From the IMG/VR virus record IMGVR_UViG_3300028394_002328, positions 186,001-250,000 of that record: a DNA stretch of 64,000 bases; one strand, 5' to 3'. Position 1 is the stretch's first letter. Every line of letters begins with the position of its first letter. The translations under genes and the position numbers were made by a program. Of the stretch, positions 24,325-40,349 are shown piece by piece. The notes beneath the pieces are model-generated. The model saw only the letters and a program-made list of their open reading frames with translations. It had not been told where the DNA came from and did not search any database.

Positions 24325-24725
24325 GACATTTTGAATTTATTACCGAACAGAAATCAATCACACAACATACCGAAGGTGGTTCGTTAGAAGGGTATGTTAT
24401 GTCTACAGATAAACCCAATATTAATAACTACTTACAAAGTCAAGGTGCAACACCTGAGTTAATAGACAATATCGCAAAACGGTATAAAACTTTGGGGTTA
24501 ATAAGAAACATGTATGTAGATGATGATTATCGTGGTCAAGGCATTGGTAATGATTTAGTAAGCAACGCAATTGATGATGCTGCTAATAACGGCGCAGAAG
24601 CCATTATATTAATCTCAGATACCGACGAAGATAACCCATTTGATTTAACAAAATGGTATGAGGGTTTTGGGTTTGAAGTAGTGGGTACGGCGGGTAATAA
24701 CCCTGTAATGATACTTGATCTTTAA
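24321..24725 (+). CDS. GNAT family acetyltransferase
   Basis: MYVDDDYRGQGIG motif A and L..WYEGFGF motif B; MRHFEFITE start. Confidence 0.8.
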   Translation: MRHFEFITEQKSITQHTEGGSLEGYVMSTDKPNINNYLQSQGATPELIDNIAKRYKTLGLIRNMYVDDDYRGQGIGNDLVSNAIDDAANNGAEAIILISDTDEDNPFDLTKWYEGFGFEVVGTAGNNPVMILDL

Positions 24726-24743
24726 GTCATCTTGTGTTATCAT
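24715..24743 (+). promoter_or_regulatory. sigma70-type promoter, probably giving a leaderless tilS-like mRNA
   Basis: TTGATC-17 nt-TATCAT; ATG at 24750 lies 6 nt after the -10 box and has no SD. Confidence 0.5.
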
Positions 24744-24749
24744 ACACAG

Positions 24750-26061: not shown

Positions 26062-26322
26062 ATGACTGCACGAACTTTTAGCGCAGAAGCAAAAATTAAG
26101 CTTACCCAAATGATCAACGAAGGCATGGCTACCATGCATGAAATTGATACACTAAACGGTGGCTTGAATGATACCATTAAAGCAGTAGCCGAAGAACTAG
26201 AGATTAAGGCTAGCACATTGAAGAAAGCAGTAAAAATTGCTCATAAGGCTAGTTTGGGTCAGACTAACAAAGACCATGACGAACTCAATACGATTTTGGA
26301 GACGGTTGGCAAAACCCTATGA
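26062..26322 (+). CDS. small helical DNA-binding protein, T4 DsbA-like
   Basis: 86 aa, ..DTIKAVAEELEIK.STLKKAVKIAHK pattern, directly upstream of the polymerase. Confidence 0.5.
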   Translation: MTARTFSAEAKIKLTQMINEGMATMHEIDTLNGGLNDTIKAVAEELEIKASTLKKAVKIAHKASLGQTNKDHDELNTILETVGKTL

Positions 26323-29033
26323 GTTATGTAGACGCTATACATGACCGCAATGGCGACAAGATATTTGTCGTAGAACGGACTACCCAAGGTACAAGGACTT
26401 TTAAAGAGTACCCTGCTAACTATACATTTTATTACAGCGATCCTAAGGGCAAATATCGTAGTCTTTATGGCGATCCTGTAAACAAATTCAGTACAAGAAA
26501 ACGTGCTGAGTTTGAAAAGGAGCGTAGGATTCATTCAGGTAAGAAATTATTTGAAAGTGATATCAATGTAGTCTTTCGCTGCCTTTCAGAGAATTATCTG
26601 AAAATTGATCCTCCTAAGTTGCATACATGCTTCTTTGACATTGAGGTTGATTTTGATCCTGAAAAGGGCTTTAGTCCCACTAGTGATCCATTCAACCCTG
26701 TAACAGCAATTAGTATGTATTTGGATTGGCTAGACCAATTGTTTACTCTATGTATTGCTCCTAAACATATGTCCGAAGAAACGGCACAAGAAATTGTAGG
26801 AGAATTTGATAACACTATCCTTTTTAAAAGTGAAAAGGAAATGTTTGATATGTTCTTTCAGTTGATTGACAATGCCGATGTTCTAACTGGTTGGAACTCA
26901 GAAGGATACGACATACCCTACATGATCAATCGTGTTACTAGGGTAATGAGTAAAGATGATACCCGTAAGTTTTGTTTGATGGGTCAGATGCCTAAGCCAA
27001 GAACTTATGAAAGGTTTGGAAAAGAAGAGCAAACATATGACTTAGTTGGTCGTATTCACATGGACTATCTACAGTTGTACAAAAAATACAATTATGAAAG
27101 TCGCCATAGCTATAAACTAGACTCTATCGGTGAGATGGAAGTTGGTGAAAATAAAACACAATATGAAGGTACTCTTGACCAATTGTATAACAAGGACTTT
27201 AAAAAGTTCCTTGAGTATAACAGGCAGGATACTATGTTGTTGGTTAAGATTCACAACAAGTTGAAATTTCTAGATTTAGCAAATGCTCTAGCACATGAGA
27301 ACACAGTGCTATTGCCAACAGTGATGGGTTCAGTTGCAATGATTGAAATGGCAATCATGAACGAAGCCCATGAGCGTGGTTTAGTAGTCCCTGATAAAAA
27401 ACGAAAGGAAGGAAGTAATGATGAACAACAAGCGGCAGGTGCCTATGTTGCTACGCCCAAAAGGGGCATTCACGAATGGGTCGGAGCAGTTGACATTAAC
27501 AGTCTTTACCCGTCAGCAATCCGCGCTCTTAACATGGCCCCTGAGACCATTGTCGGTCAGGTCAGGCAATCACTCACTAACCAATACATGCAAGACAAAG
27601 GCAAAAGGTTAGCCAACGAAAAGAAACGTGCTAAAGAAGATGACGATGCCGTAACTGGTAGTATTCTATGGGAAGGCTTGTTTGGCTCACTAGAATATAC
27701 TGCTATTATGAACCAAGAACGCGGCACAATGCTTACACTAGACTATGAAGATGGTCGTAGTGAAGAAATGAGTGCGGCAGAGATTTGGAAATTAATCTTT
27801 GATAGTCACAAGCCTTGGATACTTAGTGCTAATGGTACTATATTTAAGTATGACCAAGAAGGTGTGATTCCTGGTCTACTATCACGTTGGTATAGTGATC
27901 GTAAGGTCATGCAAAAGAAACTTAGAGAATCTACTACTGACGAAGATAAAGAGTATTGGGATAAGCGTCAATTAGTGCGTAAGATTTTGCTTAACTCAGC
28001 ATACGGCGCACTATTAAACGAGCATTGTCGTTTCTATGACAAGCGTATCGGTCAAAGTGTTACTCTAAGCGGTAGACAGATTGTTAAGCATATGATGAGT
28101 ACCATCAATGAAACAATCACTGGTGAATATAACCACGATGGTTCTGCGATTGTCTATGGAGATACTGACAGTTGCTACTTTAGTGCTTATGCTAGTTTGC
28201 AACCACAAATAAAAGGTGGTGAATTAGAGTGGAATAAAGAAACTTGTATTGGCTTGTATGATGGTATTGCCGATCAGGCTAACGATTCATTTCCTGCTTT
28301 CATGGAACGAGCATTTCATGCTCCAAGAAAGAATGGAGAAATCATCAAGGCTGGCCGTGAATTGATTGGTGATCGTACACTGTTTATCACAAAGAAACGT
28401 TATGCTATCAATATCTTTGACAAAGAAGGTAAGCGCAAAGATAAAGACGGTAAAATGGGTGACGTTAAGGCTATGGGCCTTGATTTGAAACGAGCGGATA
28501 CTCCTAAATACATTCAAGACTTTTTGATGGACGTCTTGTGTATGGTATTGCAAGAGGGTAAAAGCCGCGAAGAAGTCATTGAAAAAATCAAAGAGTTTAA
28601 GAAAACACTAAGTGAACAGGACAGTTGGACTAAAGGATCTCCTAAAGGTGTAAACAAACTTACAACGTATGGAGACTTGGAAGCTAACAGTAAAACTGGT
28701 CGTGCTAATATGCCAGGACATGTTAGAGCGGCATTGAACTATAACTACTTACGCAGAGTTAATGGTGACAATTATTCTATGAAAATCGTTGATGGAATGA
28801 AGGTTATCGTTTGTAAACTAAAACAAAATGCGTTAGGGTTCACTAGTATTGCATATCCAACTGATGAATTAAGGTTACCTGCTTGGTTCTGTGAACTTCC
28901 ATTTGATGATAACGAAATGGAACGTACATTAGTAGATGAAAAAATAGAAAATTTGCTAGGTGTATTAGGTTGGGATTTGCGTAGTAATACTAATACTAAT
29001 TCAACATTTGACCAATTGTTTACATTTGGGTAA
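26319..29033 (+). CDS. family B DNA polymerase (T4 gp43-like)
   Basis: Exo I FFDIEVD, Exo II GWNSEGYD, Exo III YNRQD; pol motifs VDINSLYPS, KILLNSAYG, YGDTDS; KKRYA; no intein or intron seen. Confidence 0.96.
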   Translation: MSYVDAIHDRNGDKIFVVERTTQGTRTFKEYPANYTFYYSDPKGKYRSLYGDPVNKFSTRKRAEFEKERRIHSGKKLFESDINVVFRCLSENYLKIDPPKLHTCFFDIEVDFDPEKGFSPTSDPFNPVTAISMYLDWLDQLFTLCIAPKHMSEETAQEIVGEFDNTILFKSEKEMFDMFFQLIDNADVLTGWNSEGYDIPYMINRVTRVMSKDDTRKFCLMGQMPKPRTYERFGKEEQTYDLVGRIHMDYLQLYKKYNYESRHSYKLDSIGEMEVGENKTQYEGTLDQLYNKDFKKFLEYNRQDTMLLVKIHNKLKFLDLANALAHENTVLLPTVMGSVAMIEMAIMNEAHERGLVVPDKKRKEGSNDEQQAAGAYVATPKRGIHEWVGAVDINSLYPSAIRALNMAPETIVGQVRQSLTNQYMQDKGKRLANEKKRAKEDDDAVTGSILWEGLFGSLEYTAIMNQERGTMLTLDYEDGRSEEMSAAEIWKLIFDSHKPWILSANGTIFKYDQEGVIPGLLSRWYSDRKVMQKKLRESTTDEDKEYWDKRQLVRKILLNSAYGALLNEHCRFYDKRIGQSVTLSGRQIVKHMMSTINETITGEYNHDGSAIVYGDTDSCYFSAYASLQPQIKGGELEWNKETCIGLYDGIADQANDSFPAFMERAFHAPRKNGEIIKAGRELIGDRTLFITKKRYAINIFDKEGKRKDKDGKMGDVKAMGLDLKRADTPKYIQDFLMDVLCMVLQEGKSREEVIEKIKEFKKTLSEQDSWTKGSPKGVNKLTTYGDLEANSKTGRANMPGHVRAALNYNYLRRVNGDNYSMKIVDGMKVIVCKLKQNALGFTSIAYPTDELRLPAWFCELPFDDNEMERTLVDEKIENLLGVLGWDLRSNTNTNSTFDQLFTFG

Positions 29034-29112: not shown

Positions 29113-29844
29113 ATGAAAGATAATTTACAAGATTTAGTTGAACATACATATGGATTAGGTAAGCTAGACCTAATTAAAATCGTGGGTACTAAAACATCAA
29201 CACAGATGTTTGCATTGTCTGAGGACAAAAGCGTTATATTTTCAGGTAATTTTAAAACTCCAATTATTGAGTTTGATGGCACATTTGGTATGCCAAACTT
29301 AAGCAAACTCAAAACAATTTTGGGATTTGAAGATTATGATGAAAATGCTATCATTACAGTTTCTACACAAAAAACTGATGAAGGTGTACAGCCTAGTGCT
29401 ATTTTGTTTGAAACAAAAACTAGTGATTTCGTAAATAATTATAGGTTTATGAAGAAATCAGTAGTAGAAGATAAAATTAAAAGTGTTTCTTTTAAAGGTG
29501 CTACTTGGAACATAGAATTTGAGCCCACAGTAGCAGGTATTTTACGTTTGAAAAAACAGCATCAAGCCAATAGTGAAGAAGAAACTTTTACGGTTAAGGT
29601 TGAAAATGGTGATCTTAAAATTTACTTTGGAGATCCAACTACTCACTCAGGCAATTTTATATTTTATCCACAAGTAACAGGAACGTTGGCTAGATCAATG
29701 ATGTGGCCTATTAAAACTTTCTTGGCAATTATGGACTTGCCAGGTGACAAAACCGTAAGAATTTCTGATCAAGGTGTAGCTGAAATTGTCATTGACAGTG
29801 GACTTGCTATATACTACTATCGTTTACCGGCTCAAATTAAATGA
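29113..29844 (+). CDS. probable DNA polymerase sliding clamp (gp45-like)
   Basis: 243 aa alternating beta/alpha pattern typical of clamps, adjacent to the polymerase; no short diagnostic motif. Confidence 0.6.
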   Translation: MKDNLQDLVEHTYGLGKLDLIKIVGTKTSTQMFALSEDKSVIFSGNFKTPIIEFDGTFGMPNLSKLKTILGFEDYDENAIITVSTQKTDEGVQPSAILFETKTSDFVNNYRFMKKSVVEDKIKSVSFKGATWNIEFEPTVAGILRLKKQHQANSEEETFTVKVENGDLKIYFGDPTTHSGNFIFYPQVTGTLARSMMWPIKTFLAIMDLPGDKTVRISDQGVAEIVIDSGLAIYYYRLPAQIK

Positions 29845-30173
29845 TTAGAATTAACCACTCAGGTGGTGTGCCGTTTTTTCAAAATGATACGTCATACAAT
29901 TTACCATCTTCAACTGGTGCTGTTCAATGGAACGGTAATAGTAAAAAATTTCAAGTAAGCAGCGGTGGTAGTTGGATAGATATTGAAAATTCAATAAATT
30001 TAAATGCTGACCATGACTACCTGATGGTTATGCGGTGGGCTAGAGAAAAAATGCATGAAGAACACGAACTAGAAAGGCTGGCAAAAGAAAATACTACTCT
30101 TAAAGATTTAGTTGACCAACTCAACTACACTAAAGAGCAGATTAAAGTAGTTACAACGCTCTTGAAAGCATAA
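29841..30173 (+). CDS. hypothetical protein with C-terminal coiled coil
   Basis: Coupled ORF (ATGA and TAATG overlaps). Confidence 0.65.
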   Translation: MIRINHSGGVPFFQNDTSYNLPSSTGAVQWNGNSKKFQVSSGGSWIDIENSINLNADHDYLMVMRWAREKMHEEHELERLAKENTTLKDLVDQLNYTKEQIKVVTTLLKA

Positions 30174-31720
30174 TGGAACAAGTAAATCTATCAACATCAC
30201 ACAATCCCGATTGGGCACTATTCTTACCAGCAGTTAGTAGTTTTTATATTGCTGGCTTAGGTAAGCAACGCAATGGCGAACAGTATTTTGACTCAGCAAG
30301 AATTCCTAAAGGTTTTGGTGGTGATGTAGAAAAACTTAATTTTCTTAATAGCAAAGAAGGATTGTACTATTACAAGTGGGGCCTGTATAGTGCAGGTCAT
30401 GCTAACTTAGATACTACTAAAGTTGACTTCAACGAAAGTATTATCCGTGATCGTGAAGCAGGTACTTTCATGCTAGGTGACAGTGGGGGCTTTCAAATTC
30501 TAAAAGGTCAATGGCCTGCTGATTGGAAAGATCCTAACTGTCCCAAAGCAATGATTAAGCGTAAGGCAGTCCTTAATTGGATGGACACATACATGGACTA
30601 TGGTATGTGTCTTGATATTCCTTCGCAATCTCTACGCACATTTCACTTAAAAGATCCAAAGACAGGTAAGTCATTGCATGGCATCAGTACTATTCAAGAG
30701 GCTATTGATGCTACACATATCAATAACAAATATTTTATTGAGAACCGTAATGGTAACTGTAAGTTCTTAAATGTTCTACAGGGTCTTACTCATACTCAAA
30801 GTGATCAGTGGTATGAAGAGATGAAAAAATATTGTGATCCAAATATCTATCCCGAGAATCATTTCAATGGTTGGGCATTTGGGGGACAAAATAAAATTGA
30901 TATTCATCTTACTCTCAAACGTATCGTAGGCATTATTCATGACGGTCTTCTCCAAGAAGGTAAACATGATTTGATTCACTGTTTGGGTACAAGTATCTTG
31001 GAATATGCTGTATTGTTTACAGATATTCAACGAGCGGTTCGCAAATATCATAATCCAAAACTACAGATTACTTTTGACTGTGCCAGCCCATTCTTCAGTG
31101 CGGCTAAAGGACTAGCATATTTCAATACCAGTATTGAGCATAATAAAAAATGGTCCTATAGCATGGAAAAAACCGCAGAGAAAAAATCCTATGCTAATGA
31201 TACTCGCAAATTCCGTGATGCGGTATTACAAGATGGTATCCATAAAGTGTTTACAGATAGTCCTGTAACTGATAGAATGCTGTTAAAGGATCTGTGCTAT
31301 AGGGGTCAAGGATTCATTGGTCAACATGGTAAAGAAACAAAAACTAGTTGGGATACTCTAAGTTATACTCTACTTCAATCTCATAATGTATACCAGCATA
31401 TCTATGCTGTACAAGAGGCTAATCGCAGATATGAACAGGGTGTGATTCCAAAGATGATTATGAATGAAACTTTTGAGCGTATTCGTTTTAGTGAAATTGT
31501 AGATGAAATTTTCTCTCTCAACGACCGCCAAAAGAGTTTGGACTTAATTGATTATCATAGTAGATTTTGGATGCAGATGCAAAGTGGTAGTCAAGGGTTT
31601 AGTGGTAAGAAAACTGTAAACGCTAGAACTATGTTTGATCAATTGTTTACTACTGAAGAACCCAAAGAAGAAGTAATTGAAGATAGTGATGACTTAATGC
31701 TTGAGGTACTAGGAGATTAA
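30173..31720 (+). CDS. dpdA: DpdA-like tRNA-guanine transglycosylase paralogue (DNA 7-deazaguanine insertion)
   Basis: TGT-fold motifs in order: GDSGGFQ, CLDIP, VLQG, WAFGG, IHCLG, FDCASP, SHN; lies in an operon with folE/queD/queE. Confidence 0.8.
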   Translation: MEQVNLSTSHNPDWALFLPAVSSFYIAGLGKQRNGEQYFDSARIPKGFGGDVEKLNFLNSKEGLYYYKWGLYSAGHANLDTTKVDFNESIIRDREAGTFMLGDSGGFQILKGQWPADWKDPNCPKAMIKRKAVLNWMDTYMDYGMCLDIPSQSLRTFHLKDPKTGKSLHGISTIQEAIDATHINNKYFIENRNGNCKFLNVLQGLTHTQSDQWYEEMKKYCDPNIYPENHFNGWAFGGQNKIDIHLTLKRIVGIIHDGLLQEGKHDLIHCLGTSILEYAVLFTDIQRAVRKYHNPKLQITFDCASPFFSAAKGLAYFNTSIEHNKKWSYSMEKTAEKKSYANDTRKFRDAVLQDGIHKVFTDSPVTDRMLLKDLCYRGQGFIGQHGKETKTSWDTLSYTLLQSHNVYQHIYAVQEANRRYEQGVIPKMIMNETFERIRFSEIVDEIFSLNDRQKSLDLIDYHSRFWMQMQSGSQGFSGKKTVNARTMFDQLFTTEEPKEEVIEDSDDLMLEVLGD

Positions 31721-31721
31721 T

Positions 31722-31925
31722 ATGCCTTATAAAAATCGTATAGAAACTATTAAACAAAGTATCAAACTATTAGAATCTAGAATTTATTCATACAATGAAT
31801 ATGATGCGGAAACTGTATTTGATATGCGGCGTCAAGTACTTATTTTGAGTACTGAATTGAACAAACTTACTAAATTGCAATGGGAAGAAGAACACGACCG
31901 AGTTAACTTTGAGGATGACCATTAA
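31722..31925 (+). CDS. hypothetical protein
   Basis: 67 aa coupled ORF. Confidence 0.6.
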   Translation: MPYKNRIETIKQSIKLLESRIYSYNEYDAETVFDMRRQVLILSTELNKLTKLQWEEEHDRVNFEDDH

Positions 31926-32375
31926 ATGGAACAAGTATTGCTAGCAAAACAAGAAAAGCGTAATCGTATTAAAGATCAGGCTAAACGCATGATTTGGGTT
32001 ACTTTTCAAAAAGAAGGTATTCACTGTTACCCTTCTGCATCTATTGATGCTAATTTGGCAACAGGTGATGAATATGATGTAAGTTTTTTAGGAACTCCGC
32101 ATCGTCACATTTTTCATTTCAATGTGGCGATTCAAGTATTTCACAACGACAGGGATATTGAATTTATTCAGTTTAAGCGATGGTTAGAGAACCTTTATCG
32201 TGGCACACTTGAACTAAATTACAAAAGTTGTGAAATGATTAGTGATGACCTTTATCAGTCTATTGCTAATCGCTATCCCGACCGTGACATTCATATCACT
32301 ATTTCAGAAGATGGTGAGAACGGTGCCACAATTTACTATAATACAACTAAACCTTATCAACAACTTGCTATTTAA
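31926..32375 (+). CDS. QueD-like T-fold protein, candidate DpdL (CDG decarboxylase)
   Basis: EGIH, LGTPHRHIF (LxxxHRHxF), DIEF, SCEM, SEDGENG; second T-fold protein in addition to the canonical queD. Confidence 0.68.
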   Translation: MEQVLLAKQEKRNRIKDQAKRMIWVTFQKEGIHCYPSASIDANLATGDEYDVSFLGTPHRHIFHFNVAIQVFHNDRDIEFIQFKRWLENLYRGTLELNYKSCEMISDDLYQSIANRYPDRDIHITISEDGENGATIYYNTTKPYQQLAI

Positions 32376-32385
32376 AGGAAATAAA

Positions 32386-32595
32386 ATGGCTAAAATTAAA
32401 TTTCAACCTAATCCCCGTGTTCATGCAATTTTCGATGACCTTGACAAGTACCGCGAATTTTGTGTAGATTATGGATTTAAATTTGATGAAGCAGACCTCT
32501 ACAGCACTAAAAGCTACGTCTATAGGCAATTCACTAAACATCTTTCAGGTAAAACTGTAAAGAGTATATGGGATATTGATACTAAGGCTAATTAA
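32386..32595 (+). CDS. hypothetical protein (MAKIKFQPNP...)
   Basis: AAGGA SD before ATG 32386; shorter than the track ORF starting 32242. Confidence 0.65.
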   Translation: MAKIKFQPNPRVHAIFDDLDKYREFCVDYGFKFDEADLYSTKSYVYRQFTKHLSGKTVKSIWDIDTKAN

Positions 32596-33770
32596 TGCGT
32601 AAACTATTTTACATGGGTCTTGAGCCGTATAAGGCCCGATACACTCTACAACTACAAGAATGGAATGAACGTGTATTTAAGCGGCGTAAGATTAACTATG
32701 TAATCGTACCCGGCGAAACACTAACTACTGACCAATCTATTGTTACTGGTCAGGTCCTAGATGCACATGGTCGCACATACTTTGGTATGAGCCAATTAAT
32801 GAATCTAGTTAAGTTGATGAAGGCAGGTGAATGCAGTAATGAAGATGTTATATACTTTGAGGACATGTTTCAACCAGGAATCGAGAGTCTACCCTATATC
32901 CTCAATCAAATCAGTCCTGAGCATTGCCCTCGCATTTTTGTTCGCTGTCTTGCTCAGTCTATTGATCCAGATGATTTTGTTCATGTCTGGGGTATGTCAG
33001 AGTGGATGGGCCATTATGAAAAAATGGTTGACTCGTTCGTAGATGGTGTACTTGCTACTAACGAAGAAATGGTAATGCATATGAAGGTAGCAGGTTGGAG
33101 GGCTCCAATCTATAATATTTCAGGGCTTGCATTTGGTCGTGATGAAGTACAAAGCCGTGTTGAGCAAATTAAAAACTTCAATGATCGGCGTATGCGTGTA
33201 GTGTTCAGTTCACGTTGGGATCAGGAAAAACAACCTGATTTTTATATGGATCTGATTGAAGCATATCATGCCTCACATCCAAATCATAATACCGAATTTG
33301 TTATCTGTAGCGGTGGTAGTCTTAAGTCAAATAACCAATCTTACATGAGTAGGACTCGCAAATTTCAAGAAAAAGGTTTGCTAACGGTTTATGAAAACTT
33401 AGAAAAAAATGCTTATTATAATATCCTTAATGATAGTAGGGTTGTCTTTAATTGCGCCCTTCAAGATTGGGTTTCCAACACAGTCAGTGAAGCAGATAGT
33501 CTTGGGTGTAATGTTTTATTCCCTGCTTATCGGTCTTTCCCTGAGACTTTTTCTAATGACCATACAAGACTTTATGTACCTTGGTCAATAGAAGATGCAC
33601 TAGCAAAACTAGAAAAATTGTTGGCTAAACCTCACGTTAATATTGGTAAGATTAGTAAATATAATGATGGTACTATTGACCGTATTTGTGACATTCTACA
33701 AGATAAAGGTGATAGTATGTTGAGAATGTCTACTGACTATCGTAAATATCTCAGAGAAAATAAGTATTGA
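32595..33770 (+). CDS. GT-B fold glycosyltransferase
   Basis: VVFSSRWDQEKQP and VFNCALQDWVSNTVSEA...GCNVLFPAYRSFPE, the GT4-like nucleotide-sugar binding region. Confidence 0.75.
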   Translation: MRKLFYMGLEPYKARYTLQLQEWNERVFKRRKINYVIVPGETLTTDQSIVTGQVLDAHGRTYFGMSQLMNLVKLMKAGECSNEDVIYFEDMFQPGIESLPYILNQISPEHCPRIFVRCLAQSIDPDDFVHVWGMSEWMGHYEKMVDSFVDGVLATNEEMVMHMKVAGWRAPIYNISGLAFGRDEVQSRVEQIKNFNDRRMRVVFSSRWDQEKQPDFYMDLIEAYHASHPNHNTEFVICSGGSLKSNNQSYMSRTRKFQEKGLLTVYENLEKNAYYNILNDSRVVFNCALQDWVSNTVSEADSLGCNVLFPAYRSFPETFSNDHTRLYVPWSIEDALAKLEKLLAKPHVNIGKISKYNDGTIDRICDILQDKGDSMLRMSTDYRKYLRENKY

Positions 33771-33837
33771 TAAATACTAATGTCACACAAAGGTGACAAA
33801 ATGTCAAAACAAAACCATCACAACGGAGGGTTATCAA

Positions 33838-34512
33838 ATGTCGTACAATAAAACCAAAACAGATCCTGAACTAGGACTATTAGTACATGAATATCTAGTA
33901 AAGATGGGAGTTGAAACTCCTGTTATTTCAAACGGTATTGATCGTAAAGAAAAGATTGATAAAATTGAGAATCATTTTCGTGAGATTATGGGGATTCTCG
34001 GCCTAGACTTAACTGATGATAGTCTAATAGAAACACCTAACCGTGTTGCTAAAATGTATGTAAATGAAATTTTTTGGGGACTCGATTTTGAAGCATTCCC
34101 AAAATGTACTACAGTAGACAATAAAATGCACTATAATGAAATGGTGGTTGAACGTAATATCAACGTTCAAAGTAACTGCGAACATCATTTTGTAATCATT
34201 GATGGATTAGCAACTGTAGCATATGTACCAAAAAGAAAGGTATTAGGTCTAAGTAAAATTAATCGCATTGTAGAATACTTTAGCAAGCGCCCACAAATTC
34301 AAGAACGGTTGACTGAACAGATTTTCTATGCACTACAATTTATCCTTGAAACAAATGATGTTGCGGTTATGATTGATGCCCAACATTATTGTGTCAAAAG
34401 CCGAGGTGTAGAAGATACAGGTAGTAGTACTGTTACTACTAGGCTTGGCGGTGGATTCAAATCTGATCCTGAAGTTCGTAATGAATTTTATCAGATTGCA
34501 AGGATGCGTTAA
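33838..34512 (+). CDS. folE: GTP cyclohydrolase I
   Basis: ETPNRVAKMY, SNCEHHF, GLSKINRIV, RPQIQERLT, HYCVKSRG; GGAGG SD before ATG 33838. Confidence 0.95.
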   Translation: MSYNKTKTDPELGLLVHEYLVKMGVETPVISNGIDRKEKIDKIENHFREIMGILGLDLTDDSLIETPNRVAKMYVNEIFWGLDFEAFPKCTTVDNKMHYNEMVVERNINVQSNCEHHFVIIDGLATVAYVPKRKVLGLSKINRIVEYFSKRPQIQERLTEQIFYALQFILETNDVAVMIDAQHYCVKSRGVEDTGSSTVTTRLGGGFKSDPEVRNEFYQIARMR

Positions 34513-34637
34513 TGTTAACTATATTGACCTTGATTGTAATTGTTGCTATAACTTATATTATGTTTTTTAAAACTACAATCAATAGTAATTGCAATGGAAA
34601 TTGCAATCAAGGTCGCAACTGTACATGTAAGGTATAA
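34512..34637 (+). CDS. 41 aa membrane-anchored Cys-rich peptide (…CNGNCNQGRNCTC), not in the ORF track
   Basis: TAATG coupling to folE; hydrophobic N-terminus and four Cys. Confidence 0.6.
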   Translation: MLTILTLIVIVAITYIMFFKTTINSNCNGNCNQGRNCTCKV

Positions 34638-34639
34638 AG

Positions 34640-34876
34640 ATGGGATTTAAAAAACCATTAGAATTAAGTACAGTCGTTTATCAGATTAGCGCGGCTGGAA
34701 GAGAACTAACTAGTCCATATAACGATGGATTTACACAATGGGAAATCAAAAAAGAATTATATTACATTAAGTTTCTTTTAGATGATATAATTGAACGATC
34801 TGGTACGTTTAATGGCGAAGAGGAATTCTTAAAAGAAGAATCTCAAAAAAGAATGATCAACATACTAAAAAGGTAA
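34640..34876 (+). CDS. hypothetical protein
   Basis: 78 aa ORF in operon. Confidence 0.65.
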   Translation: MGFKKPLELSTVVYQISAAGRELTSPYNDGFTQWEIKKELYYIKFLLDDIIERSGTFNGEEEFLKEESQKRMINILKR

Positions 34877-34880
34877 TAAA

Positions 34881-35084
34881 ATGAAAGAATTTGTGCTTAA
34901 AGATATGAATCAATACACAGTTAGAGTTAAGAAAAATAGGTGTTTGAGACCACAAGAGTTGACTCATATTGAGTTTATCCAAGAAAGTAAAAACGATAAA
35001 GGTGAAGTAGTAGATACTTCAACCTATCAATTTTTCTTAACTGACAGTGAAATTAAAACTCTAGTAGCCAATTTGGTTGAATAA
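34881..35084 (+). CDS. hypothetical protein
   Basis: 67 aa ORF in operon. Confidence 0.6.
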   Translation: MKEFVLKDMNQYTVRVKKNRCLRPQELTHIEFIQESKNDKGEVVDTSTYQFFLTDSEIKTLVANLVE

Positions 35085-35085
35085 T

Positions 35086-35631
35086 ATGGCTAAGTTTTAT
35101 TCAACCAAAACTTATGGTAATGACAGAGGATTAAGTTGTTGTTTTAGACAATGGCGAGCTAAACACAGTCATTGTAGTACATTACATGGATACAGTATTG
35201 GTATTAAATTAGTATTTGAATGCGAAACATTGGATGACAAAAACTGGTGTATGGACTTTGGTGGACTAAAAGAATTCAAAGCATGGGCTGATTATATGTT
35301 TGACCATACACTAATTATTGCTGAAGATGATCCTCATCTAGAATTTTTCAAGCAAATGGCATTGATTGACACAAACTGGACTTTGCCCGAAACCGGTCCA
35401 GATGAAATGCGAGTTGATAGAAATAATTTCGAGCCATACCAAAGAGGCTCTCTATGTGATTTACGCATTGTAGAAGGTGTAGGTTGTGAGATGTTTGCTA
35501 AAATGGCATATGACAAAATGGCTGAGTTGTTAGACGGTGGTAATATGCGATATCCCATTAACCCTAATGTAAGAATTAAAAGCGCCGAGGTTTTCGAGCA
35601 TGGAGCCAACTCAGCTACCTACGAGGGTTAA
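35086..35631 (+). CDS. queD: 6-carboxy-5,6,7,8-tetrahydropterin synthase QueD
   Basis: SHCSTLHGYS, MDFGGLK, FDHT, GCEMFA, VFEHGANSA. Confidence 0.88.
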   Translation: MAKFYSTKTYGNDRGLSCCFRQWRAKHSHCSTLHGYSIGIKLVFECETLDDKNWCMDFGGLKEFKAWADYMFDHTLIIAEDDPHLEFFKQMALIDTNWTLPETGPDEMRVDRNNFEPYQRGSLCDLRIVEGVGCEMFAKMAYDKMAELLDGGNMRYPINPNVRIKSAEVFEHGANSATYEG

Positions 35632-35782
35632 ACTTTGGCGATTATGGAGCAAGGCATTGGGAGAAAAGTCCGGTGCCACGGATCAAGAAAGTGACCTAAT
35701 AGCTTTGGTTAGAACTTGTATTGTGATATCATATATAATTACAAATATGTTTATCATAGCAGGGATTATACGACATTGGTAA
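35600..35782 (+). CDS. small membrane protein
   Basis: WRLWSKALGEK...D.IALVRT followed by a hydrophobic helix. Confidence 0.55.
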   Translation: MEPTQLPTRVKLWRLWSKALGEKSGATDQESDLIALVRTCIVISYIITNMFIIAGIIRHW

Positions 35783-35800
35783 TTAATTTAGGAATTTAAA

Positions 35801-35989
35801 ATGAGTGATGTTAGAAATCGCATGGCAGAATTAATGGAACCTATTGACAAGCAAATTATGATGTGCGATAATAGGGAAGATTTGCTAATGTTAGCCTGTG
35901 CTATGTTGACTTCAGTTAAAACGATATTTGACCAAGAGTTAGGTAAAAAAGCCCGTATCCAATTATTTAAAGATTATATAGATGAGTAA
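35801..35989 (+). CDS. hypothetical protein
   Basis: 62 aa ORF with AGGA SD. Confidence 0.6.
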   Translation: MSDVRNRMAELMEPIDKQIMMCDNREDLLMLACAMLTSVKTIFDQELGKKARIQLFKDYIDE

Positions 35990-36833
35990 TATTAAGATAA
36001 GCGAACTGTTCTATTCCATACAAGGAGAAGGTCGTTATATGGGGGTGCCTAGTGTGTTCCTTCGCACATTTGGCTGTAATTTTACCTGTGATGGTTTTGG
36101 TATGCCACGCGGAGGAACAAGTATTGAACGAATTCAAGTTGGATTGTTACATGAAGGAAATCCTTATAAAAATTATAAAGATTTGCCCCTTGTAAGTACA
36201 GGTTGTGACAGTTATGCAAGTTGGGATCCAGCATTTAAAGATTTGAGTCCTGTACTTACTACTGATGCTATCGTTAATCGCATTATGGAAATTCTTCCAT
36301 ATAATGAATGGCGTGATGAACATTTGGTTATTACAGGTGGAGAACCATTGCTAGGTTGGCAAAAACAATATCCTGATCTATTAAATCATCTTAAAATGCA
36401 TGGTTTAAAAGAAATTACTTTTGAAACAAATGGTACTCAAAAACTAACTTCAGAATTTAAATCAGCATTAAAAGAATGGAGCAAATGGTACAATAGAGAA
36501 ATTACATTTAGTGTTAGTGCCAAACTGCCTTGTAGCGGTGAAATATGGGAAGATGCTATTAAACCTAAGGTAGTATGTGAATATGAACAATATGGCACTT
36601 CCTATCTAAAGTTTGTTATTGCTACAGAACAAGATTTTGCTGATGCCAAAAATGCTATTGCTGAATTTCGTGGTGCAGGATTTAAAGGACATGTATATCT
36701 AATGCCAATTGGTGGTGTGGAAAGTATTTACTCTATGAATAATAAAAATGTAGCCATGCTAGCAATGAAGCATGGACTAAGATACAGCGATAGACTCCAG
36801 GTACCTCTGTTCAAAAACGAATGGGGTACTTGA
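35982..36833 (+). CDS. queE: 7-carboxy-7-deazaguanine synthase QueE (radical SAM)
   Basis: ISELFYSIQGEG, FLRTFGCNFTC...CDS, VITGGEP, FETNG, SVSAKL, RLQVPLF. Confidence 0.92.
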   Translation: MSNIKISELFYSIQGEGRYMGVPSVFLRTFGCNFTCDGFGMPRGGTSIERIQVGLLHEGNPYKNYKDLPLVSTGCDSYASWDPAFKDLSPVLTTDAIVNRIMEILPYNEWRDEHLVITGGEPLLGWQKQYPDLLNHLKMHGLKEITFETNGTQKLTSEFKSALKEWSKWYNREITFSVSAKLPCSGEIWEDAIKPKVVCEYEQYGTSYLKFVIATEQDFADAKNAIAEFRGAGFKGHVYLMPIGGVESIYSMNNKNVAMLAMKHGLRYSDRLQVPLFKNEWGT

Positions 36834-38173
36834 TGAGGACGTATGATAAACGAATTGGTTTTTTAGTTAGTTTCCAAACACTAGTACCTCATGGTGGTAT
36901 AGGACAATTCGCTAAAAGTTTCTGCGAATTGATGGATAGTCATAATATTAAAGTTGATATTATTACTGACAAAGAACCAAAAAATAATGAGTTTGTAAAC
37001 TCATTAAAAGCAAATATTGTTTATCCTACTGAGTCATTCACATACACAGATCATAGTAATATCTTTATGTATGGTGATACCTTTTGCTATGAACGAATGG
37101 CTAACTTTCGCAACGCAATAATTAAAGCCACAACCAATAACCTATATGACGCATTAATTTGTAACACATATGAAACTATACAAGTTGCTAGTACAATGGG
37201 TCTTGAAGATGTAATTCAAATCATTGCCTATACTCATTTAGAAAGTCAAATCTTTAAGGATACTAAAAATCCTTTCTTACATAGTACCAATGAAATGATG
37301 CGTAATCAATTAGAAATGAATGGATTGTATGTAGGAACACAAAGCAAATTCAATCAAATTTCAATGAGCAATAGCGCATGGCATCTACCTATTCCAATTA
37401 CTGAGCGTGGGTTACTAGAAGAACATCATAAACCACGTGAAGGTGTATTGTTTATTGGTCGTTGGGAAGAAGGTAAAAATCCCGAAACATATTTAGAGTT
37501 GATTGAAAAAACTAAGTTACCTGCGAGGGTAATGACTAATGCCAATGGTGCAAAAAAGTTTGAAGAACGCTTTAAAAAGATAGGCGTAACTGATTATAAA
37601 ATTGCTGTTAGTATTATTGGTAAAGAAAAAGTAGATTTCATTACTAGTTGTAGAGTAGCATTCAATCCTAGTACAGTAGAAAGTTATGGTATGGCTTTCT
37701 ATGAGCAACATATTCAATTACCTACAGTTGTTTTAGAAAATCAACGTTGGACTAATAACTTTGATAAAAATCATTTCTTTACTGTAAATAAAAAGAACAT
37801 GGTTGAAACTGTATTAGATTTATACAACAATGTTCCTGATGCTAAAACATGGTATGCTAATAATATATTAGAAGTATATCAGAGTAAAGAGAATGATGTA
37901 TTTCACAAATGGAATGAATGTTTTAACAAGTTTACTAGTAAACAATCAAACAGTAATACCGCAAAAATATGTGAAGAAACTACTGTAAAGTATATTGATT
38001 TTACTAATAGTTTAGGTCGTAGATTATTGTGTATTGACGATATTAAATCTGTATTGACAAACAAACATAAATTCCGTATAATATACACAGATAATGATAC
38101 ATACTTATCTAAAGATCCAACATTTGAACCAGTAGAGGAAGTAACAGGCTTAAGCCTATTTGAAGGATTATGA
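36833..38173 (+). CDS. GT-B fold (GT4-like) glycosyltransferase
   Basis: PHGGIGQF N-terminal loop, LFIGRWEEGKNP, PSTVESYGMAFYE; TGATG coupling to queE. Confidence 0.78.
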   Translation: MRTYDKRIGFLVSFQTLVPHGGIGQFAKSFCELMDSHNIKVDIITDKEPKNNEFVNSLKANIVYPTESFTYTDHSNIFMYGDTFCYERMANFRNAIIKATTNNLYDALICNTYETIQVASTMGLEDVIQIIAYTHLESQIFKDTKNPFLHSTNEMMRNQLEMNGLYVGTQSKFNQISMSNSAWHLPIPITERGLLEEHHKPREGVLFIGRWEEGKNPETYLELIEKTKLPARVMTNANGAKKFEERFKKIGVTDYKIAVSIIGKEKVDFITSCRVAFNPSTVESYGMAFYEQHIQLPTVVLENQRWTNNFDKNHFFTVNKKNMVETVLDLYNNVPDAKTWYANNILEVYQSKENDVFHKWNECFNKFTSKQSNSNTAKICEETTVKYIDFTNSLGRRLLCIDDIKSVLTNKHKFRIIYTDNDTYLSKDPTFEPVEEVTGLSLFEGL

Positions 38174-38988
38174 AAAAAGTATTAATAACAGGTAGTTCAG
38201 GATACATTGGCAGTCATCTTACTAATCTATTAAAAGATGAATATGAAGTACATGGACTTGATCGTGTTGAACCACAAGTAGCACCACATACATTTTATCA
38301 TTGTGACATTAACCGTCAGTTTAACTTAGATGAAGAGTTTGATGCTGTAGTACATTTAGCCGCTCTAGTTAATGTAGGAGAAAGTGAAAAGCAACCTATT
38401 CAATACTACATTACTAACCTAAATGGTACTATGAATGTAGTTAATAAGATAAAAACTAAAAACTTTATTTTTTCTAGTACCGGTGCTGCACAAGACTGTA
38501 TAAGTGCATATGGTATTAGTAAGCGAGCGGCAGAAGATGTAGTAAGGTCGTATTCTGAAATGGTTAGTATGGACTATACTATCTTTAGATTTTATAATGT
38601 CATTGGTAGCACAGTAGTTAATCCTACTAACCCAGATGGGTTATTTTACAATTTAATTAAAGCTCGGGCGACTGGTCAATTTACTATACATGGTAGTGAT
38701 TATAATACTAGTGATGGCACTTGTGTTAGAGATTATGTTCATGTAGATGAGATTTGTAATTCTATTAAATTGGCAATTGAACGGCCAGCAAATCAAACAG
38801 AAGCATTAGGTCATGGTAAAGGATATACTGTTAAAGAAATGGTAACTATCTTTGAAAGTATTAATAATTGTAAAATCAATGTGAAGACAGGCCCTCGTAG
38901 AAAGGGTGATATTGAACATTATGTACTTAAGAACCCATCATCTTACATGCATGAGTTGTATAATATTGGTCAACTACTAAAGATTTAA
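38170..38988 (+). CDS. NAD-dependent nucleotide-sugar epimerase (GalE-like SDR)
   Basis: ITGSSGYIG, HLAALVNVGES, FSST, YGISK (YxxxK), FRFYNV, DGTCVRDYVHV. Confidence 0.88.
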   Translation: MKKVLITGSSGYIGSHLTNLLKDEYEVHGLDRVEPQVAPHTFYHCDINRQFNLDEEFDAVVHLAALVNVGESEKQPIQYYITNLNGTMNVVNKIKTKNFIFSSTGAAQDCISAYGISKRAAEDVVRSYSEMVSMDYTIFRFYNVIGSTVVNPTNPDGLFYNLIKARATGQFTIHGSDYNTSDGTCVRDYVHVDEICNSIKLAIERPANQTEALGHGKGYTVKEMVTIFESINNCKINVKTGPRRKGDIEHYVLKNPSSYMHELYNIGQLLKI

Positions 38989-38990: not shown

Positions 38991-40349
38991 TTACTTTAAA
39001 CCTGCACTGACCCAAGGATCAGCAATTACTAGAGTATCATCTCTCTGCATTACATTGCTATAATCATGTGCGATAATATCATTACTAAATCCTAATTTAG
39101 TACCGGTTGCTGTAACTGATTTAAGTGTTTTATAGAAATTAGTATATTGACGATATTGCGGATCTAATGGACTGCCTTCGTCAATACTATACATCATATC
39201 TATAATCATTTCATCATAGTCAGGATCTAATTCTTCTAATCGTTCCATAACTACCTGATCAAACTTTTCAACTCCCAATTGAATTGGTTGTTTAGTAGTT
39301 TCTATAAACTTAGGTAAGTGTGGGTTATTAGCATTTTTCTCGCAATAATTAAGAAATGCTAAGAATGGATTTTTAGCGGTAGAGATATCGCCATTCTCAG
39401 GTATTAATACTTTAATTACTGGACCTTCTTCTTTAGCAAAAACATGTGCGTCTGTACCATGACCGATATAACTATAGCCTAATTTATTCATATAATCATT
39501 AAGCATGTTGACATGTTTATTATAGTCAAACTCGGTTAATTCTTGCTCTTCAATTTTTCTAGCAACGATACCTTTATTCTTTATTAATTTCTCTTCATCC
39601 CACCTAACTGGGTTAATCATTGGATACAAGTATTTGGTATCGGTGGCTCCGATATCAAACAGACTTCTCGGTGGAACTAGATGTTGTTTTCTAAGTTTAT
39701 CAAACTTTTCAGCATCTACTACTATTGGTTCCCCAATAGTTACTTGACCAATCGCAACTGCAGGGCCATTACCAGTTCTAACAATACCAACCGTTCTACC
39801 AACATATGGTCTAAGACTGTCAGTTTTTCTAGATTCGTATTTCTTTTTGCCGTCAACAATTAAACTAGCATAGTCAGTATTGCCATCACTTCTGACATTG
39901 ATGCCAATAGTTGGTTTATTGTCTGTATTTTCTGTTATATTTTTTTCTGATGGCTTGACAATCTCTGCACTTGATAAATCTAATGGTCCTGCTATCCAAT
40001 ACTCATCAATATCATCAGATTCATACTTCCACGCATTAGGATCATAGTTAGCACTAGTCATACCCTTTGTTCGCATAAAAGTTTTATGTCCTGGTATTGG
40101 ATATATTTTATTAGATATTTTACTAGCATTAATTCTAATTAATGTATCTCCTGTCCATCTACTAATATGTTCTTTATCAGTAAAACTATTACCGGGTATC
40201 ATTTTCCCTTCTGATTCTATATAGTGAGCATAACCTCTTTTCACTGGTAATTTTTTAGAATCAATATACTTTTGAAATTGATTTCCTTCTACCCACTTAT
40301 ATAGATAGGTGGGTACTTGAACTGATTCTAATAACTCTTTAATACGCAT
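38991..40349 (-). CDS. tripartite protein: ART-like domain + ASCH domain + Ser/Thr kinase-like domain
   Basis: LYK...GNSFT...DEY (ART-like, weak); GINV...LIVDGKKKYESR...AIGQV (ASCH); IGHGTDAHVF, VIK, MERL, HDYSNVM, VIADP (kinase); MRIKELLE start. Confidence 0.65.
   Translation of the reverse strand: MRIKELLESVQVPTYLYKWVEGNQFQKYIDSKKLPVKRGYAHYIESEGKMIPGNSFTDKEHISRWTGDTLIRINASKISNKIYPIPGHKTFMRTKGMTSANYDPNAWKYESDDIDEYWIAGPLDLSSAEIVKPSEKNITENTDNKPTIGINVRSDGNTDYASLIVDGKKKYESRKTDSLRPYVGRTVGIVRTGNGPAVAIGQVTIGEPIVVDAEKFDKLRKQHLVPPRSLFDIGATDTKYLYPMINPVRWDEEKLIKNKGIVARKIEEQELTEFDYNKHVNMLNDYMNKLGYSYIGHGTDAHVFAKEEGPVIKVLIPENGDISTAKNPFLAFLNYCEKNANNPHLPKFIETTKQPIQLGVEKFDQVVMERLEELDPDYDEMIIDMMYSIDEGSPLDPQYRQYTNFYKTLKSVTATGTKLGFSNDIIAHDYSNVMQRDDTLVIADPWVSAGLK

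What the first reader, a model, noticed from the sequence alone, without database searches (positions are those of the whole stretch)
30173..36833. 7-deazaguanine DNA-modification locus without QueC but with a DpdL-like T-fold protein
Seen: dpdA-like, folE, queD, queE and a second QueD-like protein with LGTPHRHIF, directly downstream of the polymerase and clamp; no queC, queF or arcS in the window. Known: FolE-QueD-QueE yields CDG and DpdA exchanges it or a derivative for guanine in DNA; a QueD paralogue (DpdL; LxxxHRHxF motif as I recall it, to be verified) was described as decarboxylating CDG to 7-deazaguanine. Inference: the DNA carries dDG and/or dCDG as anti-restriction protection.
Basis: partly seen in the sequence, partly recalled or inferred. 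Interest (0 to 1): 0.8.

Follow-up and report, generated by a model that had tools for sequence, protein, structure and literature searches.

The report
Deazaguanine DNA-modification genes with sugar transferases
An uncultured freshwater jumbo phage carries a known kind of gene set for replacing guanine in its DNA with a 7-deazaguanine. The set also contains a sugar-transferring enzyme that travels with it across unrelated phages, so the final base may carry a sugar, which has not been described.

Summary
Downstream of polB and the clamp lie a TGT-fold transglycosylase (30173-31720), a DpdL-family T-fold protein with LGTPHRHIF (31926-32375), FolE, QueD and QueE. No QueC, QueF or ArcS is in the window.

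This matches the QueC-less DpdL systems of Cui et al. 2023, but DpdL's decarboxylase activity has never been shown. The closest tested relative (ACP17 DpdL, 52% identical) gave no dDG in E. coli.

- Two GT-B glycosyltransferases (32595-33770, 36821-38173) and a GalE-like epimerase belong to the block.
- The first glycosyltransferase (GT391) sits beside DpdL in seven phage lineages. It is in 80 of 83 IMG/VR DpdL loci without DpdA3 and in 0 of 11 with DpdA3, the type proven to make dDG.
- The transglycosylase belongs to a large family separate from the validated DpdA2 clade. It keeps the three catalytic Asp but lacks the structural Zn motif.

Most likely the module puts a QueC-independent 7-deazaguanine into DNA. 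The glycosyltransferase either glycosylates it or is a missing cofactor of this pathway variant. I rate it a new variant of a known kind.

The parts
26319..29033 (+). Family B DNA polymerase. Context: starts the + strand block.
   Evidence: Pfam DNA_pol_B_exo1 and DNA_pol_B in the source's gene calls. Closest is Sinorhizobium phage Phosso at 49.5%.
29113..29844 (+). Sliding clamp (context).
   Evidence: No Pfam hit. Clusters with the PA5oct and Phosso genes at the same position; the Phosso gene is annotated as sliding clamp.
29841..30173 (+). Small conserved ORF (110 aa) just upstream of the transglycosylase. Function unknown.
   Evidence: Found at this position in most of the 80 IMG/VR relatives.
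30173..31720 (+). TGT-fold base-exchange enzyme (DpdA-like, 515 aa) of the PA5oct gp316 type. Predicted DNA guanine transglycosylase.
   Evidence: AF2 pLDDT 90. PDB hits are all TGTs, E 2e-6 and Z 17-18. D103, D148 and D302 are invariant in 58 homologues and align to E. coli TGT D89, D143 and D264. No CxCxxC Zn motif in 0 of 58. Clade separate from DpdA2. 856 representatives at 50% clustering.
31722..31925 (+). Small ORF (67 aa). Function unknown.
   Evidence: Present in many close relatives.
31926..32375 (+). DpdL-family T-fold protein (QueD/PTPS paralogue). Proposed CDG decarboxylase.
   Evidence: LGTPHRHIF matches LxxxHRHxF. Identity is 69% to Phosso, 52% to ACP17 DpdL and 31% to phiST DpdL. 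Invariant H33, H59, H61, H73, S101-C102-E103 and E128. PTPS link from PHROG 17812, the atlas and the weak hit to PTPS homologue 2dj6.
32389..32595 (+). Small ORF (68 aa) between DpdL and the glycosyltransferase. Function unknown.
   Evidence: Kept between DpdL and GT391 in nearly all 80 close relatives.
32595..33770 (+). GT391: GT-B, GT4-like, probably retaining NDP-sugar glycosyltransferase. Conserved partner of DpdL.
   Evidence: Weak Pfam Glycos_transf_1. AF2 pLDDT 78.6, Z 20-24 to GT4 enzymes (BshA, MshA, PimA and others). R207, K212 and a D/E-x7-E299 motif are conserved. Homologues lie beside DpdL in BUCT-ZZ01 (63%), ACP17, X1, BCSR5, PA5oct and Phosso. Present in 80 of 83 non-DpdA3 IMG/VR DpdL loci.
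33793..34512 (+). FolE, GTP cyclohydrolase I.
   Evidence: Pfam E 5e-61; NCBIfam NF006824 at 328 bits against a cutoff of 202.
35077..35631 (+). QueD-like 6-carboxytetrahydropterin synthase.
   Evidence: Pfam PTPS E 1e-14; PHROG 2389 E 2e-34. Carries CSTLHGY at the site of the QueD CxxxHGH motif, as do the phiST and ACP17 QueD.
35982..36833 (+). QueE-like radical SAM enzyme (CDG synthase).
   Evidence: PHROG 2076 E 2e-51. NCBIfam QueE models hit below their cutoffs. Invariant C32, C36, C75 and TGGEP.
36821..38173 (+). GT450: second GT-B-like glycosyltransferase.
   Evidence: Weak Pfam Glycos_transf_1. 40% identical homologue inside the BUCT-ZZ01 deazaguanine cluster. Within reach of DpdL in only 13 of 73 GT391-positive loci, and also found in Erwinia jumbo phages without DpdL.
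38170..38988 (+). NAD-dependent sugar-nucleotide 4-epimerase/dehydratase (GalE-like). Last gene of the + strand block.
   Evidence: Pfam Epimerase E 2e-35; TIGR01179 galE at 163 bits, below its cutoff. In several relatives it lies directly after GT391. The next gene, 38991-40349, is on the - strand.

Best explanation
This is a phage module that replaces guanine in the phage's own DNA with a 7-deazaguanine made without QueC. A glycosyltransferase is an integral part of the module.

Inferred from family membership: FolE, QueD and QueE turn GTP into 7-carboxy-7-deazaguanine (CDG).

Proposed in the literature, never shown: the DpdL T-fold protein converts CDG into 7-deazaguanine.

Inferred from fold, catalytic residues and context: the TGT-fold enzyme at 30173-31720 swaps the deazapurine for guanine in DNA after replication. 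It would use D302 as nucleophile and D103 as general acid/base.

New inference from co-occurrence: the GT4-like enzyme next to DpdL, probably helped here by the second glycosyltransferase and the GalE-like epimerase that supplies the NDP-sugar, acts in the same pathway. Either it adds a sugar to the deazapurine, or it is a factor this transglycosylase type needs.

The function would be protection of phage DNA from restriction and other DNA-targeting defences.
For: - Gene identities.
- TGT fold with all three catalytic Asp.
- DpdL homology and motif.
- No QueC in the window or in any of 233 related DpdL loci.
- Gene order DpdA-like, DpdL, p68, GT391, FolE, QueD, QueE kept in 80 IMG/VR relatives.
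- GT391 homologues are adjacent to, or within four genes of, DpdL in seven unrelated phage lineages.
- Both glycosyltransferases sit in the module of the cyanophage BUCT-ZZ01, with the module transferred as a unit (63% and 40% identity).
- Of 23 phage records with a GT391-family gene, 18 carry DpdL.
- GT391 is in 80 of 83 non-DpdA3 DpdL loci and 0 of 11 DpdA3 loci; the median gap to DpdL is 624 bp.
- GT4 donor-binding and EX7E-type residues are conserved.
- PA5oct, which has the same architecture, has DNA resistant to enzymes with G in their sites and is hit by defences that sense modified G (PMC12191111).
- ACP17 dpdA + dpdL, expressed without the glycosyltransferase gene that lies between them, gave no dDG.
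Against: - No chemistry is available for this phage or any phage of this architecture.
- DpdL activity is unproven.
- 7-deazaguanine has no obvious hydroxyl or amine handle at C7 for a retaining O-glycosyltransferase, so the acceptor is unknown.
- The GT391 family also occurs in one phage group (PhiXhv-12/15/16, Ep026, Ep032) with no deazaguanine genes nearby.
- GT450 is only loosely linked.
- The co-occurrence counts are inflated by relatedness. Most IMG/VR loci belong to one clade.
- The transglycosylase lacks the Zn site that is conserved in TGT and bacterial DpdA.
- A host QueC could divert CDG to preQ0.
Confidence: 0.6

Rival explanations
1. The product is simply dDG and/or dCDG. The glycosyltransferases and epimerase sit in the block by chance of synteny and act on something else, such as another base, a virion protein or the host envelope.
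For: dDG is the measured product in DpdL phages phiST, phi19:2 and phi13:1. DpdL sequences from the two architectures are close to each other, for example RHph_I1_18 (DpdA3 type) at 63% to the window, so DpdL chemistry is probably the same. VH7D DpdA2 can insert CDG weakly. GT391 relatives occur without DpdL in the PhiXhv group.
Against: Chance synteny does not explain adjacency in seven unrelated lineages with different gene orders, nor the 80/83 against 0/11 split. ACP17 dpdA + dpdL alone gave no dDG. No hydroxymethylase or other glycosylation handle was found in the window.
Confidence: 0.27
2. The host's QueC, with or without QueF, finishes the pathway. The transglycosylase then inserts preQ0 or preQ1, and the phage genes only boost CDG supply.
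For: All DpdA enzymes tested so far accept preQ0. Most bacteria have QueC (general knowledge). The rest of the contig could not be searched.
Against: DpdL systems consistently lack QueC: 0 of 233 loci here, and this was stated for isolates by Cui et al.. A conserved DpdL would then have no role. phiST DNA contains dDG, not preQ0.
Confidence: 0.08
3. The module does not modify DNA. It makes a small molecule such as a glycosylated pterin or deazapurine, or it modifies tRNA.
For: The GT391 model resembles a cyanobacterial pteridine glucosyltransferase (5zer, Z 21) about as well as other GT4 enzymes. FolE and PTPS-like enzymes are also pterin enzymes.
Against: QueE and a TGT-fold enzyme point to a deazapurine base exchange. 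The block is embedded among replication genes (polB, clamp). PA5oct DNA is modified at G. The Z-scores do not discriminate within GT4.
Confidence: 0.05

Closest known systems
DpdL-containing dDG system of Cellulophaga phage phiST (Cui et al. 2023, PMC10516641)
   Same: FolE, QueD and QueE plus a DpdL with the LxxxHRHxF motif, no QueC, and a TGT-superfamily enzyme. DpdL is homologous at 31% identity, E 2e-9.
   Different: phiST uses the short DpdA3 (259 aa, no DSGGxQ) and has no GT391 nearby. It has MazG and a kinase-like ATPase instead. The window has a 515-aa TGT of another family plus glycosyltransferases. dDG is measured in phiST; nothing is measured here.
Acidovorax phage ACP17 module (its dpdL was tested by Cui et al. 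2023)
   Same: QueD, FolE, DpdA, GT391 homologue, DpdL and QueE next to polB. DpdL is 52% identical and the glycosyltransferase is homologous at E 2e-18.
   Different: Its transglycosylase belongs to the DpdA2 clade with nt-1 and VH7D. It has no second glycosyltransferase or epimerase. Its heterologous test left out the glycosyltransferase and gave no dDG.
Pseudomonas jumbo phage PA5oct (Wroclawvirus) deazaguanine system
   Same: Same order: polB, clamp, small ORF, transglycosylase of the same family (34% identity), GT391 homologue, DpdL (57%), then QueE. Its DNA is modified at G according to restriction tests. The system was noted by Iyer et al. 2021.
   Different: The chemical identity of its modification is unpublished in the papers held. 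No GT450 or epimerase lies in that block.
Synechococcus phage BUCT-ZZ01 (ON615601) module
   Same: QueE, QueD, FolE, GT450 homologue (40%), DpdA, DpdL and GT391 homologue (63%) in one block.
   Different: It is a T4-like cyanophage with a DpdA2-clade transglycosylase. Its cluster also holds a phosphoribosyltransferase.
Phage DNA glycosyltransferases acting on 5-hydroxymethylcytosine (T4 alpha/beta-GT; metavirome GTs, bioRxiv 10.1101/2023.12.21.572611)
   Same: GT-B fold enzymes encoded beside base-modifying genes. T4 AGT matches the GT391 model at Z 19.
   Different: Those act on a pyrimidine hydroxymethyl group. No purine or deazapurine acceptor is reported, and the word guanine does not occur in that paper. 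GT391 is nearer to GT4 enzymes such as BshA, MshA and PimA.

Membership tests
DpdL (proposed CDG decarboxylase; Cui et al. 2023) | Signature LxxxHRHxF in place of the QueD CxxxHGH motif | tested here: met
   L55-G-T-P-H59-R-H61-I-F63. Motif definition read from the paper. Aligned with the ACP17 and phiST DpdL.
DpdL (proposed CDG decarboxylase; Cui et al. 2023) | Sequence homology to the founding members (phiST CGPG_00067, ACP17 DpdL) | tested here: met
   tblastn: ACP17 52%, E 8e-36; phiST 31%, E 2e-9. phmmer gives the same result.
DpdL (proposed CDG decarboxylase; Cui et al. 2023) | QueD/PTPS-like T-fold | tested here: inconclusive
   The best PDB sequence hit is the PTPS homologue 2dj6, but at E 0.26. 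Atlas neighbours carry PF01242 in 10-20% of members, TM 0.68/0.86. hhalign to the window's QueD is weak. Cui et al. report HHpred 99.9% for phiST DpdL.
DpdL (proposed CDG decarboxylase; Cui et al. 2023) | Context: FolE, QueD, QueE and a DpdA, but no QueC | tested here: met
   Met for the 64-kb window and for 233 related loci.
DpdL (proposed CDG decarboxylase; Cui et al. 2023) | Decarboxylation of CDG to 7-deazaguanine | not testable with these tools
   Never shown experimentally. Heterologous expression failed.
TGT/DpdA transglycosylase superfamily | TIM-barrel TGT fold | tested here: met
   The Foldseek top 12 are all TGTs (E 2e-6 to 1e-4). VIA Z is 16.7-18.3 against 11 or less for other barrels.
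TGT/DpdA transglycosylase superfamily | Three invariant active-site Asp: general acid/base, base recognition and nucleophile | tested here: met
   D103, D148 and D302 are invariant in 58 homologues. They align with E. coli TGT D89, D143 and D264. Their roles are as described for bacterial DpdA D95, D130 and D256.
TGT/DpdA transglycosylase superfamily | Structural Zn site CxCx2Cx22H, conserved in TGT and bacterial DpdA | tested here: not met
   No CxCxxC in the window protein or in any of 58 family members. It is also absent from the ACP17, X1 and BUCT-ZZ01 DpdA2-like proteins, and present in E. coli TGT and the BCSR5 protein.
DpdA2 subfamily (nt-1, VH7D) | Groups with the validated DpdA2 proteins | tested here: not met
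   In the ML tree, nt-1, VH7D, ACP17, X1 and BUCT-ZZ01 form one clade (99/98). The window, PA5oct, Phosso and the metagenomic relatives form another, separated by a 98/94 split; long branches call for caution. hhalign to ACP17 DpdA gives only 96% probability over 179 columns. The paper's subfamily table (Supplementary Data S1) is not held.
DpdA3 subfamily (phiST, CP220) | Homology to phiST CGPG_00065 | tested here: not met
   hhalign probability 55%. Foldseek E 0.019 to phiST M4SLA5. Not in the DpdA3 BLAST cluster.
QueE (CDG synthase, radical SAM) | Three cluster Cys and a SAM-binding GGEP motif; family HMM match | tested here: met
   C32, C36, C75 and T118-G-G-E-P122 are invariant across seven phage QueE. 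PHROG 2076 E 2e-51. The NCBIfam QueE models hit below their cutoffs.
GT4-like retaining glycosyltransferases (GT-B) | Two-Rossmann GT-B fold with conserved R/K donor-phosphate residues and an EX7E-type motif | tested here: met
   AF2 model Z 20-24 to BshA, MshA, PimA, sucrose-phosphate synthase and others. R207, K212 and E299 are invariant, and position 291 is D or E. Pfam Glycos_transf_1 hits below its cutoff, 23.2 against 26.4 bits.

The most novel reading that the evidence does not exclude
The DpdL-GT4 pair marks an undescribed pathway variant whose end product is a sugar-bearing 7-deazaguanine in DNA. In this phage it could carry up to two sugars, drawn from an epimerase-supplied NDP-sugar. 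That would be the first glycosylated purine-type base in a viral genome and a ninth-plus natural 7-deazaguanine derivative. It would be installed by a Zn-less TGT family that is abundant in freshwater viromes.
Probability: 0.3. Interest if true: 0.85.

Novelty: new variant of a known kind. Interest (0 to 1): 0.6.

Why it matters
Eight 7-deazaguanine derivatives are known in phage DNA, and none carries a sugar. The step from CDG to 7-deazaguanine is still unproven.

DpdL systems come in two exclusive architectures: DpdA3 alone, or another transglycosylase plus a GT4 enzyme. This gives a concrete reason why the published ACP17 reconstitution failed. It also names the gene to add in the next experiment.

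The family is very common. DpdL was confirmed in 584-594 of the 600 IMG/VR stretches examined in each scan, and the transglycosylase family has 856 representatives at 50% clustering. It also occurs in PA5oct, a phage studied for therapy. The chemistry therefore bears on restriction evasion, on defences that sense modified G, and on sequencing and engineering of such phages.

Tried and rejected
- Megablast of the locus against 50,697 phage records found nothing. This is an uncultured lineage.
- Profile-against-PDB sequence searches did not identify the transglycosylase or GT391. Fold searches were needed.
- I considered the TilS-N-like PP-loop ATPase (24732-25343) and the GATase (25368-25985) upstream of polB as a QueC substitute. 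I rejected this as unsupported. The ATPase is of TilS type (TIGR02432, above cutoff). It has no similarity to QueC. Its homologues are absent from the DpdL modules of other phage families. It co-occurs only within the window's own clade.
- The long Bakedbeans ORF (383 aa) that ends in a DpdL domain was tested as a possible fusion clue. Its N-terminal part matches neither the glycosyltransferase nor the transglycosylase, nor any Pfam family.
I rebuilt the alignment from the window and IMG/VR loci only.
- Public runs are available only as Logan contigs, so no read-level signal of modification could be sought. RNA-library contigs at depth 2-4 do not prove transcription.
- The promoter and terminator scan gave no usable operon structure: promoter-like sites were only modestly above the shuffled expectation and scattered on both strands, and terminator-like sites were at chance level.
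- Walking the 335-kb contig with the look-up of encoding contigs would gain about 10 kb per look-up, so the whole-genome queC search was not feasible.
- The supplement of Cui et al. with the subfamily table is not held.

Full report
**Source.** The window is part of JGI metagenome 3300028394, contig Ga0304730_1000008 (335,035 bp). Window position 30173 equals record position 216173. The contig comes from an uncultured freshwater jumbo phage.
- Its PolB is closest to Sinorhizobium phage Phosso (49.5%) and Agrobacterium phage Atu_ph07 (46.7%).
- Megablast finds no phage record.
- The population is abundant and diverse in lake metagenomes. Many clusters at 82-100% identity exist for the transglycosylase. 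Word depth is about 150-360 in one run.

**Observation.**
- FolE is unambiguous.
- QueD and QueE are secure at family level: both have clear Pfam/PHROG matches, but their NCBIfam equivalog models hit below the curated cut-offs.
- QueE keeps three invariant Cys (C32, C36, C75) and TGGEP. A roughly 38-residue insert lies between the second and third Cys.
- The 149-aa protein at 31926-32375 carries LGTPHRHIF. Cui et al. 2023 define DpdL by LxxxHRHxF replacing the QueD CxxxHGH motif.
- That protein is 52% identical to ACP17 DpdL and 31% to phiST DpdL.
- No QueC, QueF or ArcS was found in the window with two QueC queries or with Pfam on all ORFs of 90 aa or more.

**The transglycosylase.** The 515-aa protein has no family-library hit, but it heads a large family of 856 representatives at 50% clustering.
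- A 58-sequence alignment has invariant S73, D103, S104, G106, D148, P150, H269 and D302, with GDSGGFQ.
- The AF2 model (pLDDT 90.1) matches only TGTs at the top of the PDB list. Z is 17-18 against 11 for other TIM barrels.
- hhalign puts D103, D148 and D302 on E. coli TGT D89, D143 and D264. These are the three Asp that are invariant and catalytic in TGT and bacterial DpdA.
- The structural Zn motif CxCx2Cx22H, conserved in TGT and bacterial DpdA, is absent from all 58 members.
- In a tree, the validated DpdA2 proteins (nt-1, VH7D) group with ACP17, X1 and BUCT-ZZ01. The window, PA5oct and Phosso proteins form a separate clade (long branches call for caution).
- Similarity to phiST DpdA3 is marginal.
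- I therefore call it a DpdA-like enzyme of the PA5oct gp316 type. It is not a member of DpdA2 or DpdA3. The published subfamily table could not be read.

Three further genes belong to the block.
- Inside the stated interval lies a 391-aa GT-B glycosyltransferase, here called GT391.
- Directly after QueE come a second glycosyltransferase (GT450) and a GalE-like epimerase.
- The - strand then begins at 38991.
- The GT391 model is a GT4-like fold, Z 20-24 to BshA, MshA, PimA and others. The donor-binding R207 and K212 and a D/E-x7-E299 motif are conserved.

**Linkage of GT391 to DpdL.** Homologues of GT391 lie next to DpdL, or within four genes of it, in several unrelated phages with different gene orders.
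- These are ACP17, PA5oct, Phosso, Xanthomonas X1/BUDD, Burkholderia BCSR5 and the cyanophage BUCT-ZZ01.
- In BUCT-ZZ01 both glycosyltransferases are in the cluster, at 63% and 40% identity.
- Among 50,697 phage records, the GT391 family is found in 23. Eighteen of those carry DpdL.
- The exception is one phage group (PhiXhv-12/15/16, Ep026, Ep032). There the glycosyltransferase sits with GlmS and a PIG-L deacetylase, and no deazaguanine genes are nearby.

**Two architectures.** The DpdL phages without GT391 near DpdL are phiST, Ahp1, Bakedbeans, D479 and RHph_I1_18. All of them carry a DpdA3-family gene. The seven lineages with GT391 carry other transglycosylases. I tested this split on IMG/VR with HMMs, using 94 DpdL loci that have at least 6 kb on both sides.

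| GT391 | Transglycosylase within reach | Loci |
|---|---|---|
| present | window's family | 68 |
| present | DpdA2-like | 3 |
| present | both | 1 |
| present | none | 8 |
| absent | DpdA3 | 11 |
| absent | window's family | 2 |
| absent | none | 1 |

- GT391 is therefore in 0 of 11 DpdA3 loci and in 80 of 83 others. Fisher p is 5e-12, but the loci are related and most fall in one clade.
- The median gap between DpdL and GT391 is 624 bp.
- DpdL sequences of the two architectures intermingle at 60% identity or more. DpdL probably does the same job in both.
- QueC is absent from all 233 DpdL loci.

**Interpretation.** The core reading stands. This is a QueC-independent 7-deazaguanine pathway with a base-exchange enzyme, of the kind described in 2023.
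- dDG has been measured only in DpdA3 phages. It was also measured in a Vibrio phage, VP1, whose gene set I did not examine.
- For the architecture seen here, the only experiment failed. ACP17 dpdA + dpdL gave no dDG, and the glycosyltransferase gene lying between those two genes was not included.
- PA5oct, the nearest cultured relative for the transglycosylase, has DNA modified at G. Its base is not identified in the papers held. Its deazaguanine system was noted in 2021.
- Known phage DNA glycosyltransferases act on hydroxymethyl-pyrimidines.
- I conclude that the glycosyltransferase is part of the pathway. Whether it glycosylates the deazapurine or serves another role with non-DpdA3 transglycosylases cannot be decided by computation. 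The acceptor atom is unclear, because 7-deazaguanine has no side-chain handle.

**Limits.**
- No chemistry is available for this architecture.
- No raw reads were available.
- The other 271 kb of the contig was not searched.
- The co-occurrence statistics are not phylogenetically independent.
- The T-fold of DpdL rests on the literature plus weak direct evidence.

**Verdict.** This is a new variant of a known kind, and it comes with a directly testable hypothesis.

Noticed in passing
window 24732-25343 and 25368-25985 (+): A TilS-N-type PP-loop ATPase (TIGR02432, 126 bits, above its cutoff) lies next to a class-I glutamine amidotransferase, just upstream of polB. This looks like an ATP-dependent amidation pair with an unknown substrate. 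It is not similar to QueC and is absent from the DpdL modules of other phage families.
   Followed up: partly
window 20774-24725 (+): A run of possible modification or ligase genes: a GNAT-like protein (257 aa), a 576-aa Amidoligase_2 protein, an SNase-like nuclease, an unknown 191-aa protein and a GNAT acetyltransferase. A ferritin-like protein lies at 20307-20774.
   Followed up: no
window 87-2351 (+); further genes somewhere in 38991-64000: The phage encodes its own proteostasis set. A ClpB-like double AAA+ protein lies at 87-2351. Pfam also finds ClpP, a ClpX zinc finger with AAA, ClpS and Hsp20 among the downstream ORFs. UvdE, an ATP-dependent DNA ligase and a 5'-3' exonuclease are there too. 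The individual ORFs were not assigned.
   Followed up: no
window about 6000-16600 (+): Five consecutive large ORFs carry Gly_rich_2 domains, two of them with Laminin_G_3, fn3 or PKD. GC here is 42-48% against about 35% elsewhere. These are probably a fibre or receptor-binding gene array.
   Followed up: no
L006 (phiST), L014 (Ahp1), L015 (Bakedbeans), L018 (D479), L005 (RHph_I1_18): In DpdA3-type DpdL loci, the short DpdA3 (no DSGGxQ motif in phiST gp042) is accompanied by a dNMP-kinase-like ATPase and a MazG or dUTPase-like pyrophosphatase. That pattern would suit a nucleotide-pool, pre-replicative route and the 100% replacement reported for DpdA3 phages.
   Followed up: partly
L017 (BCSR5) 12357-16207; L016 (X1) 7843-8376; L103 (PhiXhv-15) 6747-9981: GT391 homologues in BCSR5 and PhiXhv-15 are flanked by a PIG-L/BshB-type de-N-acetylase, and in PhiXhv-15 also by GlmS. 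This hints at a GlcNAc-then-GlcN sugar there. BCSR5 and X1 also carry PAPS-reductase-type PP-loop proteins inside the deazaguanine cluster.
   Followed up: partly
L019 (BUCT-ZZ01) 7447-7908: A phosphoribosyltransferase (Pribosyltran, E 3e-13) sits between QueE and QueD in the cyanophage module. It could turn a free deazapurine base into a nucleotide.
   Followed up: no
L015 (Bakedbeans) 11227-12378: The DpdL domain is the C-terminal third of a 383-aa annotated protein. The N-terminal 260 residues match nothing tested. This is either a fusion or a mis-called start.
   Followed up: partly
window 30173-36100: Lake metatranscriptome libraries hold short contigs at 99% identity or more over parts of the transglycosylase, the p68/GT391 junction, the FolE 3' end and QueD, at depth 2-4. 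The DNA run shows many strain variants and fragmented contigs at depth 150-360.
   Followed up: partly
window 1-20290 (ORF not resolved): One ORF has a weak cytidylyltransferase-like hit (PF01467, E 1e-4). It could be a nucleotide-sugar or NMN adenylyltransferase. Xanthomonas phage X1 has a similar gene about 8 kb from its cluster.
   Followed up: no
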